Below the pieces are notes generated by a model. The model did not search any database. It was not told the origin of the DNA and saw nothing but the letters and a program-made list of their open reading frames with translations. DNA of 64,000 bases, from IMG/VR virus record IMGVR_UViG_3300035698_022190, positions 1 through 64,000 of that record. The stretch is one strand, 5' to 3'. The first letter of the stretch is position 1; each line of letters begins with the position of its first letter. Position numbers and translations under genes: made by a program. Of the stretch, positions 8,572 through 17,851 are shown piece by piece.

Positions 8572-10598
8572 TTAGTGAACCCATTCTCTAGCAATTGCTG
8601 GGTCTACTTCCATAGGTACAGAAGGGGCATAGTGATTGAAAGCACCAACCATGGCGGTCTTTACATGCTCTGCAACTTCTTCAGCTTCATCTTTATGTAC
8701 TTCCACTAGTATTTCATCATGAATCGCATTAATGATTTTAGCATCATATTTTTCTTTATCAAAAAGTCTTTTTAATCGACACATAGCTAATTTAGTAGTA
8801 CTAGCACCACATCCTTGGAAAGGAAGGTTCTTCGCAATATTAAATGCGTGTGCAACCTGTCTGGAGTCATCCCAATCAAAAGTTGTTAAGTCCCGACGAC
8901 GACCATCTAATGGTGATAAAGCATATTTATTTCTAGCAGCATCTGTTGTTAGCCCGTCTAAAGTCTTTTTAATATAAGTAAATGTTGCGAAATATTTATT
9001 CATTAAATTACGTGCTTCCTTTATTTCAATACCTAAATTTAAAGATAATTTCATAGGACCAATACCATATATTAATCCAAAGGTTAGAGACTTGGCGGGT
9101 GTTCTATACTTCTTTTTCATATCATCTTTTAATTTTCCTTTATCATCAAAAAATGTGTCATAAGGAATATTATAAATTAAGCTAGCTGAATAGCTATGGA
9201 GATCCATATTGTTTTGTAGAGCATATAAAAACTTAGGCTCTTGTGTTAAATGTGCTAATAATCTTAGTTCTTGCAGTTAATTCTCAGTTTTCACTGAGGA
9301 CTGGACTCTCTCTTCACCCAATAGGGTGCGCCGTATATAGTCTCTACACTTGCCCGGAAAAATACTTTCCTGCTAGCTCGGGATTGCCATATCAAGTGAC
9401 TTAGGTTTCCCCGAATTAGCGGCGTTTTCACTTATAAATTTCTTTATAAGGGAGCCTTGCAAAAATCTTTCATGCTTTCTTTCAAGAAAGTCAAGAAAAA
9501 TCTTTTATGTTGACCCGAAAAGTCTGCTGAGATTATTCTGTAATTTGGATCTTGTGCAATAAATGCTGCACGATATTCTGCTGCTGCGGGAATGTTTGTC
9601 ATATTAGGATTTCGGGAAGCATATCTTCCTGAGTCTGCTCCAAGCTGTACAAAGTTGGAGTGAACGCGTCCATCAATAGTTGAAACATTTTGCTCTAAAA
9701 ACTCTTTTCCATACGTAGTAATTTTCTTTTGTTGGCCTCTGTACTCAAGCAAAGCTTCCACTGCTGGATGTTTTACTTTTTTTAAAGCAGCTTCACTGGT
9801 CGATGTTAAACGCGTACGGGTTAAATCATTTAAAATTGGCAACAATTGTTTAGGTGAGTTATAGTTTATATCTAAATTACCAAACAAATCTTTTTGACAA
9901 AATTTTTCAAAGAATTTGTCCAACTTAGTTTTTGCTATATCTGCCTGTTTAACAGCAATATCTTTTAAAGCAAGCCAGCTGTCCCTATCTAAAAATATAC
10001 CATTTATTTCCATATCAGCCGTTACCTTAGTAGTTTCATATTCTAAAGTAGACAGTTCTTTCATTCCTCGTGCATTTAAAAGTTTTTGGATTTTTTTATA
10101 AATTGGTATTAAATATTGAACATCGTCTCCGGCATATTCTAGCTGGCGTTCAGTAAATTCTTGGCCCCACTTCATTCCAACAAAAGTGGTTTGTTGTGTT
10201 TTATCTAAAGCGTGTCCTAAATACTTTAAAGCAACAGAGTTAAAACTAGCACTTTGTTTTTTACCTTGATTTAGTAACTGCTCTCCAATCATAGTGCACT
10301 TTACTGATGGTAAATCATACCCAAAATTTGTTTTTATCATTCCATAATCAAATTTTGCATTGTGTATTACACAAGTGACATCTTTGTCAACAATCCAATC
10401 TAGCACTTTATAGATATGAGTACCTAGCCTATAAACATCAAAAACAAACTGTTCTTTTTCATCTCCTATTTGCAATAATAAAACTTTTGCTTCTAGGGGA
10501 TCAAGACCCGTTGTTTCCGTATCTAAAGCGACCATAGGCTGTCGACGCAAATAAGTTAAGGCTGCATCTAAGTCACTTTCTGATTTTATATATAACAT
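8572..10598 (-). CDS. polA: Family A DNA polymerase with 3'-5' exonuclease; join(10598..9513, 9273..8572), 595 aa
   Basis: ExoI LDTETTG, HNAKFD, YAGDD; motif A restored as ADFSG|QELR after splicing; motif B KSLTFGLIYG; motif C IHDE. Confidence 0.9.
9274..9512 (-). ncRNA. Group I self-splicing intron (239 nt, no ORF) in polymerase motif A
   Basis: 5' exon ends in U and intron ends in G. P AATTCGGGGAAA, Q AATCCCGAGC, R GAGACTA, S AAGAGAGAGTCC. Stems: P2 CTTATAAA-GAAA-TTTATAAG, P3 CGCCG/CGGCG, P8 CACCC/GGGTG, P9 CTCAGT-GAAA-ACTGAG. Confidence 0.9.
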
Positions 10599-12971: not shown

Positions 12972-13559
12972 TTAAAATTTATGTATAAATGTTGGCGGAT
13001 TCACCTCCCCACGGAGCCAGTTTAATATATATTGAGAACCAATACAGCCAATAATTTTATTACCGTTCTGTACTATACCAGCTTGCTTTTCATATTCGAG
13101 CTGACAACTACCGTCTTTTACATCTTTAGGTATTGTCAACATCATAGCTTCGAGAGTATTATTTTTATTTTTAGTAAAGGCTGCAATAGCGCGCCCCTCA
13201 GAACGAAGGTCTATCCAATAAAAATCGTTTTTTTCTGCGGTTTCAAATAATAATTTTCTAAACTTTGTATTATCTACCGCACATACAACACAGTCATATC
13301 CATCTAATTCTTTTGCTTTTGTAACGCGTTCTGTTTTTCCTGTAAAACCATACCTAGCTGAAATCGATTCAGCTTTTTCATCAGTGACATCTTCCATACC
13401 AAAATTTTGATATGAGAGGTTATCCATGTCCACAGTGTCATCATCTACAAAAGTAATAAAAGCGTCGTTTAATTGGCTATGTTCATTTAAATCATATAAA
13501 TGAAATGCTAACCATGAGCCAATTCCGCCTGCCCCAACAACTAAAATATTCTTAGTCAT
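12972..13559 (-). CDS. ThiF/E1-family ubiquitin-like-protein adenylating enzyme
   Basis: ILVVGAGGIGS, VDDDTVDMDNLSYQNF, KAE, CAVDN..R, YWID motifs; candidate catalytic Cys in GSCQ. Confidence 0.85.
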   Translation of the reverse strand: MTKNILVVGAGGIGSWLAFHLYDLNEHSQLNDAFITFVDDDTVDMDNLSYQNFGMEDVTDEKAESISARYGFTGKTERVTKAKELDGYDCVVCAVDNTKFRKLLFETAEKNDFYWIDLRSEGRAIAAFTKNKNNTLEAMMLTIPKDVKDGSCQLEYEKQAGIVQNGNKIIGCIGSQYILNWLRGEVNPPTFIHKF

Positions 13560-14030
13560 CTAATCTCCTATTAAATTTATTTGTGAAGGTTCAAAACTTC
13601 TATTTATTCCATCATAAAAAAAAACGTTTGTTTTCTTTTCTAGTAATGAAAAGATGGGATAAAATCCAGCGTATCCCGCGCCGTATATATCTGTTACAGA
13701 AGGTTGCGCAATATGGTTTGGATGTGTATGAAAGATGCCAATAAAATCTTTTTTTGCACCTTTATTCATTAATGTAGTCTGTTTTAATACTTGAAAAAAC
13801 TCGTTTGGATCTGGCACATAGTGAACTTCTGTTTTTAAATTTTGTGTTCCTATAAGCTTTTTCTCAAAGTTTTGTCCTGCTACATTTGTCATACTAATAA
13901 ACTCATTACATTCAGAGTTTTTATCATCTGTTTTTAAACCGAGCAAAGCCCCAACCACTTCATGACCAGGACTTGTTTCGCCATATTTATGCATCTCTGT
14001 CCATACAGATTTCTGCATATTTAAAATCAT
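13560..14030 (-). CDS. JAB/MPN+ (JAMM) metallo-isopeptidase
   Basis: Catalytic Glu in HEVVGALLG and JAMM motif HTHPNHIAQPSVTD (HxHx7Sx2D). Confidence 0.85.
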   Translation of the reverse strand: MILNMQKSVWTEMHKYGETSPGHEVVGALLGLKTDDKNSECNEFISMTNVAGQNFEKKLIGTQNLKTEVHYVPDPNEFFQVLKQTTLMNKGAKKDFIGIFHTHPNHIAQPSVTDIYGAGYAGFYPIFSLLEKKTNVFFYDGINRSFEPSQINLIGD

Positions 14031-14031
14031 T

Positions 14032-14838
14032 TTATGCTTGTGCCGTTGAGCCTGGTGTAAATGTAAATCTACACAGCGGGTTTAAACCTAATTCTTTACA
14101 AATTGCATTTTCTGATTTTCTACCGAAACGCATTTTAAAATTGTTTACAACCCAAGCTCTACTTGCATTTACAAGGCGATTGGCACCTAAAACATCTTTT
14201 GAGTTTGGTCCATATATTGCGTATATTAAGCCATTAGATACCCATAAGTCACGCGCAGCATTATCCATAGTTTTATGGCTAGCCTGCTCCATTAAAATAC
14301 CAGGAGTATTTTGCCGCATTGGCCAGAGTTCACCCAATACGGGCAATGCTATGTGCACTAAGTGTGTCTCATTAGTACCAGTTGGGTGATCATTATCTAC
14401 ACGCCCATAAATACCTTTGTGTCTTTTATAATAATTATGTATTTGTACGTTAGTTTTAGAAATACCTAACGTAGCCAAGTGCGCAGAAATATTAACCCAA
14501 CTTAATCCTTTATTTTCAACTAAATCGCATATGTATTCAAAAGGCGTTGTGGGAAGAACCGTAGCGCCCCAGCCTAAATTATGCCAGGTGACTTTTTCTT
14601 CTTTTAATCGTTTACCTAATTTGTGAACAGTAATCCCTAATTTTTCTGCCAATTCTTTTTGCGTTATTTTATTTCCAACGGTGCCTGCAGTAAAAGTAGC
14701 AGTTTGTTTTTTACCAAAAATAACTGTTGCATCTTTTGTCATATGACCCTTTCTTAAAACTTCGCCCAGAACTCTGGAAAATTTTGGTATGCGGGGCAAT
14801 TTCGCGGTTGTCATGTTTGCTTTTGTCTCTTTCTTCAC
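14032..14838 (-). CDS. Basic hypothetical protein with HTH-like segments
   Basis: GTG start with AGGA RBS; TQKELAEKLGIT is HTH-like. Confidence 0.5.
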   Translation of the reverse strand: MKKETKANMTTAKLPRIPKFSRVLGEVLRKGHMTKDATVIFGKKQTATFTAGTVGNKITQKELAEKLGITVHKLGKRLKEEKVTWHNLGWGATVLPTTPFEYICDLVENKGLSWVNISAHLATLGISKTNVQIHNYYKRHKGIYGRVDNDHPTGTNETHLVHIALPVLGELWPMRQNTPGILMEQASHKTMDNAARDLWVSNGLIYAIYGPNSKDVLGANRLVNASRAWVVNNFKMRFGRKSENAICKELGLNPLCRFTFTPGSTAQA

Positions 14839-14861
14839 TTAATTGTTTCCTGTTTAAAATT

Positions 14862-14888
14862 AAAATGGGGGCAAGTTACCCTGCCCCC
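14862..14888 (-). terminator. Intrinsic terminator after the ubiquitin-like gene
   Basis: GGGGGCAGG-GTAA-CTTGCCCCC-ATTTT on the - strand. Confidence 0.65.
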
Positions 14889-14897
14889 TATAATATC

Positions 14898-15149
14898 TTA
14901 ACCGCCTACTAGGGCGTTTGTTAACGTAATGTCTGCTGCGTTGATAAGAATATCAACTGTTAGCTGTACGGGATTCATTTGAATTCCGTCAATATAACAC
15001 CATTTGCTATGATTATTACATTGGTCTAAGACGCGCTCTAAAGCTGCATTTGGGTATTCTTCATACTCATCATGACCACGGCTACTTACTACTTTGATCA
15101 TAATACGTGCTTTTAGTTCTTCCGTTACGTTTACGGGTTTTTGTTTCAT
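14898..15149 (-). CDS. Putative ubiquitin-like protein ending in Gly-Gly (83 aa)
   Basis: C-terminus ITLTNALVGG*; size suits a beta-grasp fold; within about 2 kb of the E1 and JAB genes. Confidence 0.7.
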   Translation of the reverse strand: MKQKPVNVTEELKARIMIKVVSSRGHDEYEEYPNAALERVLDQCNNHSKWCYIDGIQMNPVQLTVDILINAADITLTNALVGG

Positions 15150-15171
15150 TGTCTGTTTTGGTTAAAGTACT

Positions 15172-17379
15172 TTATCCCCTATCAAGGGTATATATCTGTG
15201 TTGCTAACATAGAATCATTATGTAATGCAAATATTCTATTTACTAGTTTGTCCATTCCTACCTGCGTATTACTGCTTTTATCTACTATACAAATATATTG
15301 TCCGGTATTATAATCGTGAACTCCGCACGTGCTTCGCTCAATATCACCGCTATTTAATTCAACAAAATATCTGCGTAATTTACCCTCAATTACATATCCA
15401 AATTTAGTTTTACCATTTCCTAATGTAACAGTCTCCTGTTTTATTTTAAATAGCTTTTCTGTTTCTGTTAGTAATTGTTTAGATTTAGTTATAGCATCCA
15501 CATAAGCTGTTTTTGCATCTGCTATTAAATCTTTTATGTCTTCGGGCTGTATCCCTACAACAACTTCTGGATTTAATAAAACAGTAACAGCTCCTAATAG
15601 ATCATTTTGAGCTTCCAATCTGATTAATTTGTGAGTGTTTCTAACTTTATATTCTTTATCACCTAATACTAGATAGTTTAGATTTTTTGTTCTTTCAAGA
15701 GGAAGCTTAGCTTCAATAGAAACGCCCTCAAAAGCATCACGCAATTTTAAATCAATACCATGCTGTAAATAATTATGTAGCTGTAAACTACAGCTACTAA
15801 CTGATTTTACAAAGAAATTAAAATCTTCTTGTTTTTCGTAACATAAAGCACGTCGTAAACAATCTTCTAATTCAGCTGCATTAATTCGGCAATCATTTAA
15901 ATACGTAAGGGTACTATCTACGCCAAGGCTATTAGTATTTGTGCGCTTTTCAGCTACAAAGGTTACATCACCAATAGTGCCACTATCTTGATATTGGGCT
16001 TTATTTAAGAAAGCATCAAATGCCATTTCAAAGTTAATATCATCAAGGCGCCAACTATAATTTAAAGATCTAACAATATCATAAACCCAATCTGAGGTGC
16101 TTTCAAATGTTAATCGCTGCCCTTCATATTCAATACTACGAGGTTTAAATACAACATTATTTATCTTTAGCTCTGCTTTAGGGTTCTTTTTTGCGCCAGG
16201 TTTTTGAATTAAAATATCCAATTTTTTCTGAATTTTTTCTTTTAAAACCTTTTTGGCTGCCTGTTCTTTTTCTTCTCGTGAGCGTCTTTGATCGTGTCTT
16301 TTTGTAACTAAGCGTAAACGTTCATTGTTAATTAAAGCAAAATCATTCTCACCTTTTTCAGCTTGAAGGGCATGCGCTGCTTTATTGAGTACGTCATTGT
16401 CTGGCAATATAGGGGGCATATCGCTGAAAATAACTGTTCCCAGCTTATGACCCTCTTCTGCAGTATGAGGATTACTTCTATAAAACATTACATAACGCCC
16501 AATATCTAAATAATTATAGGCAGGAAATTCAGAGTCAATCTGAATTAAGTATAGTTTTGTACTATAATAGCTAAAACAGTTTTCACCTATTACAAGCGCA
16601 ACTCTTTTATTATCGTTTCCTTCCCAAACTTTATAGATACCATAGACATCACTATGTCTATCTACTAAATTGCGCATATTTGCTAGACTATCATACGTCG
16701 TAACAACCTCTGAAGGTAAAAATTTATCAAAAGTTTTTATGGCAGTTTTTAATTCACTAGAGCCCCCAATACTTCGTAGAGGAATAGAATTATTTAGGTT
16801 TAAAAAATATGGAAGAAGAGCGTCAATGTCAACACTCAATTCTTCAGCTGTTGTATAAATTTTACTGTACATCGCCCTAATCCTACGATCTGCATCGGGA
16901 GATATTTCTTCTGGTTTTATATAAGCCAAAATTTGTAATAATTTATTCAAGACTTTAATATTAGCCTGAGAAAGTGTAGTCATACAAAAACTTTTGTTAT
17001 GATTATAGTTTTCTACGGCATAGACAAAGGCGGTCTCATTTTCTTTCAAAGAATCAATGCTTTTTGAAACTTGAGGAGACCACCCGTCTTTAGATGTTTT
17101 TGGTGCTTTATGAATGTTTACCTTATAATTTGAGGTGTCCTCTTGAAAAGGGTTAATTTCAATAAGCATGGTTTTTGTACGTAAAACATATGAAATGCGG
17201 TTACGTATTTTATCATAGTGAGAATCACTATCATGATAATTCTTTATTTTAGACTTTAAAGTGTTAAAAACAGCTTTTGCGGAATCATTTTGAGTCCGCA
17301 TCTCTGCTAATTGTTTATCAGAAATACCTAAGTCATATAAAGAATTTATTGCAGGTAGTAATATAAAGCTCGTTTGCAT
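15172..17379 (-). CDS. Large hypothetical protein (735 aa) of the ubiquitin-like module
   Basis: Long ORF with a central coiled coil and a C-terminal domain GKLRRYFV...GQYICIVD...ALHND. Confidence 0.6.
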   Translation of the reverse strand: MQTSFILLPAINSLYDLGISDKQLAEMRTQNDSAKAVFNTLKSKIKNYHDSDSHYDKIRNRISYVLRTKTMLIEINPFQEDTSNYKVNIHKAPKTSKDGWSPQVSKSIDSLKENETAFVYAVENYNHNKSFCMTTLSQANIKVLNKLLQILAYIKPEEISPDADRRIRAMYSKIYTTAEELSVDIDALLPYFLNLNNSIPLRSIGGSSELKTAIKTFDKFLPSEVVTTYDSLANMRNLVDRHSDVYGIYKVWEGNDNKRVALVIGENCFSYYSTKLYLIQIDSEFPAYNYLDIGRYVMFYRSNPHTAEEGHKLGTVIFSDMPPILPDNDVLNKAAHALQAEKGENDFALINNERLRLVTKRHDQRRSREEKEQAAKKVLKEKIQKKLDILIQKPGAKKNPKAELKINNVVFKPRSIEYEGQRLTFESTSDWVYDIVRSLNYSWRLDDINFEMAFDAFLNKAQYQDSGTIGDVTFVAEKRTNTNSLGVDSTLTYLNDCRINAAELEDCLRRALCYEKQEDFNFFVKSVSSCSLQLHNYLQHGIDLKLRDAFEGVSIEAKLPLERTKNLNYLVLGDKEYKVRNTHKLIRLEAQNDLLGAVTVLLNPEVVVGIQPEDIKDLIADAKTAYVDAITKSKQLLTETEKLFKIKQETVTLGNGKTKFGYVIEGKLRRYFVELNSGDIERSTCGVHDYNTGQYICIVDKSSNTQVGMDKLVNRIFALHNDSMLATQIYTLDRG

Positions 17380-17416: not shown

Positions 17417-17851
17417 CTAGCTTTTAGAGTTGAGGTCAAACAATGTTCCATCTTCTGTTTTTTTAATATCGCATGCAGCAATTACTAAATAGTTAGATGG
17501 GTCTGGATGAACAACTACTTCCTTGTCAATCATTTCTTTAGGTGACTTTGCGTCATAATGTTTTAACAGTTTAGCTACTGCGGATTGCGGTGCTAACTCT
17601 GTTTTTCCGCTTACGCTTTTAGTTGTTGTTAACCAAAGTCCTTGTATTCGTTGTGCTCCTTTGTGGTCTTCAACCCAAGCATCAGAAATGTTAAATTTTC
17701 GATCATTTCCATTTGTCACTATAAATACAAGTTTATCTGAGTATGTTCCTTTTTTGGGAACGTGTACTGTGTCTGTGATTACGTCTACTACTGTCGCTAA
17801 GCGTGTTTCTGATCCAATCACTAAATCTAAGAAATCTTTCGTCTCATTCAT
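17417..17851 (-). CDS. Hypothetical protein (possible OB-fold)
   Basis: 144-aa beta-rich ORF; no recognisable family. Confidence 0.5.
   Translation of the reverse strand: MNETKDFLDLVIGSETRLATVVDVITDTVHVPKKGTYSDKLVFIVTNGNDRKFNISDAWVEDHKGAQRIQGLWLTTTKSVSGKTELAPQSAVAKLLKHYDAKSPKEMIDKEVVVHPDPSNYLVIAACDIKKTEDGTLFDLNSKS

What the first reader, a model, noticed from the sequence alone, without database searches (positions are those of the whole stretch)
12972..17379. Phage-encoded ubiquitin-like conjugation module: GG-ending Ubl + E1/ThiF + JAB isopeptidase + two unknown partners
Seen: five consecutive co-oriented genes, namely a 735-aa unknown, an 83-aa protein ending LVGG, a 268-aa basic HTH-like protein, a JAB with intact HxHx7Sx2D, and a minimal 195-aa ThiF/E1 with a GSCQ Cys. 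Known: E1/JAB/Ubl sets drive protein conjugation in bacterial defence (CBASS Cap2/Cap3; Bil systems that tag phage tail proteins) and occur in PRTRC/ParB-associated loci. ThiS/MoaD sulfur carriers need ThiG, MoaE or a similar acceptor, and none is visible in this window. Inference: a lytic phage carries its own writer/eraser tagging system. It could modify host or phage proteins, or strip and compete with host defensive Ubl conjugates. The Ubl already ends in GG, so the JAB is not needed for maturation and is more plausibly a deconjugase. A terminator right after the Ubl gene would make Ubl more abundant than the enzymes.
Basis: partly seen in the sequence, partly recalled or inferred. Interest (0 to 1): 0.9.

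Follow-up and report, generated by a model that had tools for sequence, protein, structure and literature searches.

The report
Phage-encoded ubiquitin-like protein-tagging gene set
A clade of uncultured ~200-kb phages carries its own conserved set of genes for a ubiquitin-like tag, the enzyme that activates it, a protease that trims or removes it, and a large new protein whose tail resembles a ubiquitin-conjugating enzyme; bacteria are known to use such systems against phages, but I found no description of a phage owning a complete one.

Summary
The five co-oriented minus-strand genes lie at 12972-17379, in the first 64 kb of a 210-kb IMG/VR phage record.

Comparison with 22 other distinct loci changes the composition:
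- The core is four genes in fixed order: ~700-aa protein, ~80-aa Ubl, JAB, minimal ~196-aa ThiF/E1. All four are present in every locus.
- A conserved ~140-aa gene usually lies upstream.
- The 268-aa HTH-like gene is not core. It fills a variable slot between Ubl and JAB that is empty or holds unrelated genes in other lineages.

Supporting points:
- The Ubl models as a beta-grasp, and LTNAL[VA]GG is kept in about 115 of 118 homologues.
- About a third of those homologues carry 1-3 residues after GG, so JAB is probably also the maturation peptidase.
- JAB and E1 active-site residues are conserved, including an SCQ cysteine in E1.
- The whole phage genome has no recognisable sulfur-transfer partner.
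- The family is found in phages only.

Best reading: a self-contained phage Ubl-conjugation cascade with an unknown target (confidence about 0.5). No description was found in the literature searched.

The parts
17417..17851 (-). Conserved upstream 144-aa gene of unknown function, a possible fifth module member
   Evidence: A homologue lies directly upstream of the large gene in all but two of the distinct full loci (L038/L041), E 6e-29 to 4e-64. No Pfam, NCBIfam, PHROG or PADLOC family matches.
15172..17379 (-). 735-aa core protein of a new phage-only family; N-terminal and middle domains have no family assignment
   Evidence: 425 representatives at 50% clustering with E<=1e-3. AF2 with 132 sequences gives pLDDT 89.9 and pTM 0.74. 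Invariant residues are D292, Y671, C697 and D722. There is one hit among 185,579 species genomes, a 204-kb phage-like contig labelled as a Bacteroidales MAG, and 30 loci in IMG/VR.
15175..15564 (-). C-terminal domain (residues 606-735) with a UBC/UEV-like fold, a candidate E2; invariant Cys697 is the codon at 15289-15291
14898..15149 (-). 83-aa ubiquitin-like protein ending in GG
   Evidence: The AF2 model has beta-beta-alpha-beta-beta-(alpha) secondary structure, consistent with a beta-grasp; the final ~13 residues, where the last strand would lie, are unassigned, and pLDDT is 66. All top Foldseek and VIA hits are beta-grasp Ub/SUMO/UBL domains, including a bacterial Ubl in an E1-E2-Ubl complex. 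72 of 118 homologues end at GG, 42 have short extensions and one a 9-residue extension.
14867..14888 (-). GC-rich hairpin with a T-rich tail directly after the Ubl stop codon (terminator- or attenuator-like)
   Evidence: 9-bp stem with 7 G-C pairs, -19.8 kcal/mol. Hairpins of different sequence sit at the same place in 11 of 15 diverse loci.
14032..14838 (-). 268-aa basic HTH-like protein, a lineage-variable insert and not core
   Evidence: Present only in the window's close relatives and in L027-L029 (E 2e-19). Absent from most loci. L019, L020 and L024 hold unrelated genes of similar size at the same junction. Only weak HTH hits.
13560..14030 (-). JAB/JAMM metallopeptidase, 156 aa
   Evidence: Prok-JAB E 3.9e-10. 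The best NCBIfam hit is desampylase, E 3.5e-10 but below the cut-off. E24, H101xH103, S111 and D114 are at least 95% conserved in 21 distinct sequences.
12972..13559 (-). Minimal 195-aa ThiF/E1-type adenylyltransferase; conserved Cys152 is the codon at 13104-13106
   Evidence: PF00899 E 4.3e-15. It is the only ThiF match in the genome. GxGGIGS, DxDxV, VD96, FR, DLRSEG and S151-C152-Q153 are at least 95% conserved in 118 homologues. 264 homologues at E<=1e-5.

Best explanation
This is a self-contained, phage-encoded ubiquitin-like conjugation cascade. The proposed steps are:
1. The ~80-aa beta-grasp protein is the tag. In many relatives it is made with 1-3 extra C-terminal residues, which the JAB peptidase trims to expose GG.
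2. The minimal ThiF-type E1 adenylates the terminal glycine. It may then hold the tag on its conserved crossover-loop cysteine (C152).
3. The tag passes to the invariant Cys697 in the UBC/UEV-like C-terminal domain of the ~700-aa protein.
4. The large N-terminal and middle domains of that protein select the target, and the tag is joined to a target lysine.
5. JAB can also remove the tag.
6. The hairpin after the Ubl gene would make the large protein and the tag more abundant than JAB and E1.

Shown here: the gene set, its strict co-occurrence, the conserved catalytic residues and the predicted folds. Inferred: every chemical step, the E2 role, and the target, which could be a host or a phage protein.
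For: - The four genes co-occur in fixed order in all 23 distinct loci, which are 28-59% identical in the large protein.
- The Ubl models as a beta-grasp, and the LTNAL[VA]GG tail is kept in about 115 of 118 homologues.
- Short post-GG extensions occur in 42 of 118, as in Ubl precursors.
- The JAMM catalytic residues are conserved.
- The E1 nucleotide and Mg motifs and the SCQ cysteine are conserved.
- The large protein is confidently modelled. Its C-terminal domain hits the UBC superfamily in 15 or so of the top 50 VIA rows and in the top 4 of the second look. These include the bacterial E2s BubB and Cap2, which also lack the C-terminal helix pair (paper 10.1101/2024.11.21.623953).
- Cys697 is invariant in 132 sequences and lies in the loop after the fourth strand, where E2 cysteines lie.
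- The genome has no ThiG, MoaE, TtuA/Ncs6-type PP-loop, rhodanese or cysteine desulfurase.
Against: - Foldseek against PDB, AFDB and Swiss-Prot finds no E2.
- The UQ_con and Prok-E2_B HMMs find nothing in the genome, and no E2-type Pfam family recurs among the C-terminal domains.
- I could not check residue by residue that Cys697 superposes on an E2 catalytic cysteine.
- The E1 is of the minimal MoeB/ThiF type, which classically serves sulfur transfer. It lacks the separate Cys domain and the ubiquitin-fold domain of conjugating E1s.
- No target is known and no expression data exist.
Confidence: 0.5

Rival explanations
1. Sulfur-carrier system. E1 adenylates the Ubl, which becomes a C-terminal thiocarboxylate using a host sulfur donor. 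The ~700-aa protein is a new sulfurtransferase that uses Cys697 and other conserved residues to thiolate a nucleotide, DNA, tRNA or small molecule. JAB only trims the precursor, as in the CysO/Mec+ and QbsE/QbsD systems.
For: - The E1 is a minimal single-domain MoeB/ThiF type.
- JAB-E1-Ubl triads in which JAB trims residues after GG are classic for sulfur pathways (Iyer et al. 2006, PMC1779556), and post-GG extensions are common here.
- The module sits among nucleotide-metabolism and replication genes: RNR, dUTPase, dNMP kinase, PolA.
Against: - The whole genome has no rhodanese, cysteine desulfurase, ThiG, MoaE or PP-loop thiolase.
- The Ubl is not recognised by the ThiS HMM.
- The partner's conserved Cys lies in a UBC/UEV-like fold, not in a known sulfurtransferase fold.
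- Host enzymes could still supply the missing parts.
Confidence: 0.2
2. E2-independent tagging, as in archaeal SAMPylation, in which the ~700-aa protein is the main substrate or a non-catalytic Ubl-binding scaffold. Its C-terminal domain would be a UEV/RWD-like binding module rather than an enzyme. E1 would transfer the tag directly to lysines such as K701, next to Cys697.
For: - The best structural matches are the non-catalytic UEV domains of Vps23 and Tsg101.
- The best NCBIfam hit for JAB is the archaeal desampylase.
- K701 is at least 90% conserved.
- The large gene and the Ubl gene lie upstream of the hairpin, consistent with stoichiometric partners.
Against: Cys697 is invariant in 132 diverged sequences while the neighbouring lysine is replaceable by R, T or E-K variants. 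That pattern is more typical of a catalytic residue than of a binding surface.
Confidence: 0.15
3. Counter-defence by deconjugation or decoy. The JAB strips host defensive conjugates (Bil or CBASS type), and the phage Ubl and E1 compete with or poison the host pathway.
For: JAB and E1 weakly resemble the CBASS Cap3 and Cap2 E1 models (PADLOC E 1.6e-6 and 2.5e-8; NCBIfam Cap3 E 0.0097).
Against: - A lone JAB would be enough for stripping, yet the four genes are never separated.
- The module sits at a fixed place in the replication region in every locus, rather than varying as anti-defence genes usually do.
- The hosts and their defences are unknown.
Confidence: 0.1

Closest known systems
Bil (BilABCD) bacterial ISG15-like anti-phage systems
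   Different: This module is encoded by a phage, not a bacterium. The E1 is a single 195-aa adenylation domain without the inactive-domain/active-domain/Cys-domain layout of BilD. The candidate E2 is the tail of a ~700-aa multidomain protein. There is no sequence-level match to any defence-system E2 or Ubl model.
CBASS type II Cap2/Cap3
   Different: Cap2 is an E2-E1 fusion that conjugates the CD-NTase C-terminus and has no separate Ubl. This module has a separate Ubl and E1, and no CD-NTase neighbour among the called genes.
Bub (6E/DUF6527) pathways
   Different: Bub uses serine and tyrosine oxyester chemistry, with Ubl-E2 and JAB-E1 fusions plus DUF6527. This module has invariant cysteines and separate genes. 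DUF6527 was not searched for.
Archaeal SAMP/UbaA/HvJAMM1 and bacterial JAB-E1-ThiS/MoaD sulfur systems (CysO/Mec+, QbsCDE, TtuBCD)
   Same: All combine a small GG-ended beta-grasp protein, a MoeB-like single-domain E1 and a JAMM peptidase that can trim or deconjugate. The best JAB hit is the desampylase model.
   Different: The scores are far below the family cut-offs (39.9 against 130 bits). The phage genome has no sulfur acceptors or donors. The ~700-aa partner, always present here, is absent from those systems.
PRTRC (ParB-related, ThiF-related cassette) of plasmids and ICEs
   Same: The best NCBIfam match of the E1 is PRTRC_ThiF (E 1.3e-12), and tblastn finds PRTRC ThiF genes on plasmids at 27-33% identity.
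   Different: The score is 47.5 bits against a cut-off of 144.75. The genome has no ParB. PRTRC protein C ends in KTKG and shows no similarity to this Ubl.

Membership tests
Prokaryotic Ubl-conjugation systems in general (E1 + E2 + Ubl + JAB) | Beta-grasp Ubl with a conserved C-terminal glycine | tested here: met
   The AF2 model and all top fold hits are beta-grasp Ubls. The GG motif is kept in about 115 of 118 homologues.
Prokaryotic Ubl-conjugation systems in general (E1 + E2 + Ubl + JAB) | E1 adenylation domain with intact nucleotide-binding motifs | tested here: met
   PF00899 above the cut-off. GxGGIGS, DxDxV, VD, FR and DLRSEG are at least 95% conserved.
Prokaryotic Ubl-conjugation systems in general (E1 + E2 + Ubl + JAB) | E2 with a UBC fold and a catalytic Cys (or Ser) | tested here: inconclusive
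   [not shown]
Prokaryotic Ubl-conjugation systems in general (E1 + E2 + Ubl + JAB) | JAMM peptidase with E...HxH...S..D | tested here: met
Prokaryotic Ubl-conjugation systems in general (E1 + E2 + Ubl + JAB) | ATP-dependent isopeptide conjugates that JAB reverses | not testable with these tools
   Needs biochemistry.
Bil (BilABCD) | [quoted passage not shown] | tested here: not met
   The E1 is 195 aa with a single ThiF domain covering residues 4-189. The whole family is about 192-215 aa.
CBASS Cap2/Cap3 | E2-E1 fusion protein next to a CD-NTase | tested here: not met
   The E1 stands alone. PADLOC E1-E2 models match only through their E1 part. No nucleotidyltransferase is among the neighbours.
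Bub (6E) | Ubl-E2 and JAB-E1 fusions, a DUF6527 protease, and Ser/Tyr in place of the catalytic Cys | tested here: not met
   The genes are separate. Conserved Cys152 and invariant Cys697 are present. DUF6527 itself was not searched for.
PRTRC | ThiF above the TIGR03736 cut-off, with a ParB-family protein and PRTRC proteins A-E | tested here: not met
   47.5 bits against a cut-off of 144.75. No ParB_N in the genome. No similarity to PRTRC protein C.
ThiS/MoaD-type sulfur-carrier pathways | A cognate acceptor or donor: ThiG, MoaE, TtuA/Ncs6, rhodanese or cysteine desulfurase | tested here: not met
   None in the 210-kb genome at E<=1, and every control search worked. The ThiS HMM does not match the Ubl. 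Host-encoded partners cannot be excluded.
Archaeal SAMPylation (SAMP/UbaA/HvJAMM1) | Equivalog-level match to the desampylase and UbaA models | tested here: not met
   Desampylase 39.9 bits against 130; SAMP E1 20.9 bits against 450.

The most novel reading that the evidence does not exclude
A widespread clade of ~200-kb aquatic phages encodes, in every locus examined, a complete ubiquitination-like cascade: Ubl, minimal E1, a new giant E2-type enzyme with its own target-recognition domains, and a JAB writer-eraser. With it the phage tags host or phage proteins during infection. This would be the first Ubl-conjugation system owned by a virus of prokaryotes, the mirror image of the bacterial Bil, CBASS and Bub defences.
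Probability: 0.4. Interest if true: 0.85.

Novelty: new variant of a known kind. Interest (0 to 1): 0.75.

Why it matters
Ubiquitin-like conjugation in prokaryotes has so far been described as a bacterial anti-phage weapon (CBASS Cap2/Cap3, Bil, Bub) or as archaeal SAMPylation. A conserved, complete set on the phage side would show that viruses of bacteria also write and erase protein tags, as many eukaryotic viruses manipulate ubiquitin.

It would also add three things to the field:
- a new family of very small E1s;
- a new E2-type architecture, in which a UBC-like tail sits on a 600-residue recognition body, with hundreds of diverged members;
- a tractable four-gene system for asking how E1-E2 transfer works without an E1 Cys domain or ubiquitin-fold domain.

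If the sulfur-carrier rival is right instead, the large protein would be a new sulfurtransferase in a phage replication module, which would also be new.

Tried and rejected
- Close DNA and protein relatives in GenBank phages: none for the module. The PolA is at most 31% identical to any named phage.
- PRTRC membership: rejected.
- The crAss-like and Bacillus jumbo-phage JAB+ThiF pairs as relatives of this module: no relative of the large protein there.
- Sequence-level E2 detection: UQ_con, Prok-E2_B, the Pfam scan of 63 C-terminal domains, the PADLOC models and PDB profile searches all found no E2.
- Foldseek of the full-length model against PDB, AFDB clusters, Swiss-Prot, BFVD and the ESM Atlas: only uncharacterised family members, or noise.
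- Atlas feature searches for the large protein: uninformative, because the Atlas's own model is poor.
- Pfam scans of the N-terminal and middle domains across 63 members: no recurrent family.
- RNA evidence: only DNA runs from salt-lake and marine metagenomes hold the sequence.
- Homology between the 268-aa protein and the inserts in L019 and L020: none.

Full report
**Observation**

The window is the first 64 kb of a 210,208-bp IMG/VR virus record that CheckV rates complete. On the minus strand lie five tightly packed ORFs:
- 735 aa at 15172-17379;
- 83 aa at 14898-15149, ending NALVGG;
- 268 aa at 14032-14838;
- 156 aa at 13560-14030;
- 195 aa at 12972-13559.

Pfam places the 195-aa protein in ThiF (E 4.3e-15) and the 156-aa protein in Prok-JAB (E 3.9e-10), both above their cut-offs. 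The 268-aa protein has only weak HTH hits. The 83-aa and 735-aa proteins have no family. A strong hairpin (9 bp, 7 G-C pairs, T-rich tail) follows the Ubl stop codon at 14888-14867.

**Distribution and synteny**

No GenBank phage holds the module, and the PolA is at most 31% identical to any named phage. Metagenomes hold many relatives:
- 264 ThiF homologues of ~196 aa at E<=1e-5;
- 118 Ubl homologues;
- 425 representatives (50% clusters) of the large protein, mostly 600-790 aa.

Pattern scans found 30 IMG/VR loci. Among 185,579 prokaryotic species genomes there was a single hit, a 204-kb contig labelled as a Bacteroidales MAG that is evidently the same kind of phage.

I searched all fetched loci with HMMs of each gene. 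There are 23 distinct loci, including the window, and their large proteins are 28-59% identical to the window's. The order ~140-aa gene, large protein, Ubl, JAB, ThiF is invariant, and the last four genes are always present. The block always lies between the class II RNR and the sigma-70/PolA genes.

The 268-aa gene is found only in the window's near relatives and, as a distant homologue (E 2e-19), in L027-L029. Most loci have nothing between Ubl and JAB. L019, L020 and L024 carry unrelated basic HTH-like genes of 226-273 aa there. The core is therefore four genes, perhaps five with the upstream gene, and the HTH-like gene occupies a variable slot.

**The tag**

The tail LTNAL[VA]GG is kept in about 115 of 118 homologues:
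- 72 end exactly at GG;
- 42 carry 1-3 further residues (N in 25; also Q, VG, LG, NVN and others);
- one carries 9 further residues;
- three lack the tail and may be truncated.

Post-GG extensions mark precursors that a peptidase must trim.

**The enzymes**

The JAMM residues are at least 95% conserved in 21 distinct JAB sequences. In 118 E1 homologues the nucleotide-binding and Mg motifs and S151-C152-Q153 are at least 95% conserved. From general knowledge of ThiF and MoeB, I infer that this cysteine lies in the crossover-loop region, where ThiF Cys184 and the E1 catalytic cysteines sit. I could not confirm this by alignment to a solved structure, because PDB sequence hits are too weak.

The nearest named models are all far below their cut-offs: PRTRC_ThiF, the desampylase, and the CBASS E1-E2 and JAB models.

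**The large protein**

With 132 aligned homologues AF2 gives a confident model (pLDDT 89.9, pTM 0.74). D292, Y671, C697 and D722 are invariant, and about 20 further positions are at least 90% conserved.

The C-terminal motif VYxYPxGxYIC(697)IVDK...VNRxYALxND recurs through the family. In secondary structure, the last ~125 residues are a long helix, four strands, a loop holding Cys697 (pLDDT 90), then a helix. That is the order of elements in a UBC fold without the last two helices.

- the UEV domains of VPS37A, Vps23 and Tsg101;
- BubB;
- E2S, UBE2F, Ubc9, UBE2O and E2 J2;
- the Cap2 E2 domain;
- several RWD domains.

The second-look run puts four UEV structures on top. The Bub paper describes BubB and the Cap2 E2 as diverged UBC folds that lack the C-terminal helix pair, which fits.

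Several things weigh against this reading:
- Foldseek finds no E2 in any library.
- The E2 HMMs find nothing.

The only Pfam family touched is DUF7737, in 14 of 63 members, best E 4.3e-5. The N-terminal and middle domains have no recurrent family. They give only weak OB-, START- or clamp-like structural hints.

I therefore call the C-terminal domain a candidate E2, at roughly even odds.

**Sulfur-transfer alternative**

Across the whole genome there is no ThiG, MoaE, TtuA/Ncs6-type PP-loop domain, rhodanese or cysteine desulfurase. Each control search found these families in most of the control genomes, and three of the five in all 14. Host enzymes could still be used, and the E1 is of the minimal type typical of sulfur carriers, so this rival keeps about 0.2.

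**Regulation**

GC-rich hairpins of unrelated sequence follow the Ubl gene in 11 of 15 diverse loci, including loci without the HTH insert. This is consistent with partial termination, or RNA stabilisation, that separates the large-protein and Ubl genes from the JAB and E1 genes. No RNA data exist to test it; only DNA runs from salt-lake and marine metagenomes hold the sequence.

**Comparison with known systems, and novelty**

The parts list is that of the Bil systems: Ubl, E2, JAB, E1 and no E3. Membership of each named family fails on a defining feature:
- Bil: fails on the E1 architecture.
- CBASS: fails on the missing E2-E1 fusion and CD-NTase.
- Bub: fails on the fusions and the Ser/Tyr chemistry.
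- PRTRC: fails on score, ParB and protein C.
- SAMP and the sulfur systems: fail on scores and partners.

Full-text searches found no description of such a phage module. These included the 2021 comparative overview and the 2026 review of jumbo phages, and the Bil, Bub and CBASS papers. The closest mention is of lone E1-like genes in Asgard archaeal viruses.

I rate the module a new variant of a known kind: a prokaryotic Ubl-conjugation system with a new architecture, in a new owner.

**Verdict**

This is a real, conserved, phage-specific module.
- four core genes rather than five;
- the large 'unknown' is a candidate E2;
- JAB is probably both the maturase and the eraser;
- the HTH-like gene is accessory.

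Function and target remain inferred. Interest 0.75.

Noticed in passing
window 9282-9474 (-), between ORFs 9444-10598 and 8572-9207: The DNA polymerase A gene is split by a group I intron (Rfam RF00028, 74 bits, E 4.6e-19), inserted right after the 'DFSGQ' motif. The intron has no ORF here. Relatives L002-L004 and L009 carry a LAGLIDADG homing endonuclease at the same place, and L005 and L011 have an uninterrupted gene.
   Followed up: partly
L006 3268-5657 (Kehishuvirus 'tikkala'), L008 (cr85_1), L007 3507-5816 (Bacillus phage vB_BceM_WH1): Other phages also carry adjacent JAB-containing and ThiF genes: crAss-like phages (in their replication module) and a Bacillus jumbo phage. The architectures differ (JAB inside 411-460-aa proteins, ThiF of 285-383 aa with an N-terminal extension). 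No relative of the 735-aa protein is present, and no Ubl was identified there. These may be further, separate phage E1/JAB systems.
   Followed up: partly
window 14032-14838 and the same junction in L019 9925-10746, L020 10474-11154, L024 9889-10578, L027 9650-10429: The Ubl-JAB junction is an insertion hot spot. Different lineages hold different, mutually unrelated basic HTH-like genes of 226-273 aa there.
   Followed up: partly
L010 3461-3706: An 81-aa WGR-domain (PF05406) gene lies two genes upstream of the large protein in one distant relative. DUF7737, the only Pfam family that the large protein's C-terminal domain touches, occurs together with DUF4132 in the one Atlas cluster where both were seen.
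   Followed up: no
[not shown]
   Followed up: no
window 17417-17851 (-): A 144-aa gene with no family assignment lies directly upstream of the large gene in nearly all loci, so it may be an unrecognised module member.
   Followed up: partly
whole window: No tRNA genes and no Rfam family at gathering threshold in the 64 kb (the intron surfaced only in the more permissive search of its own region). The phage sequence is held by salt-lake and marine metagenome DNA runs only.
   Followed up: yes
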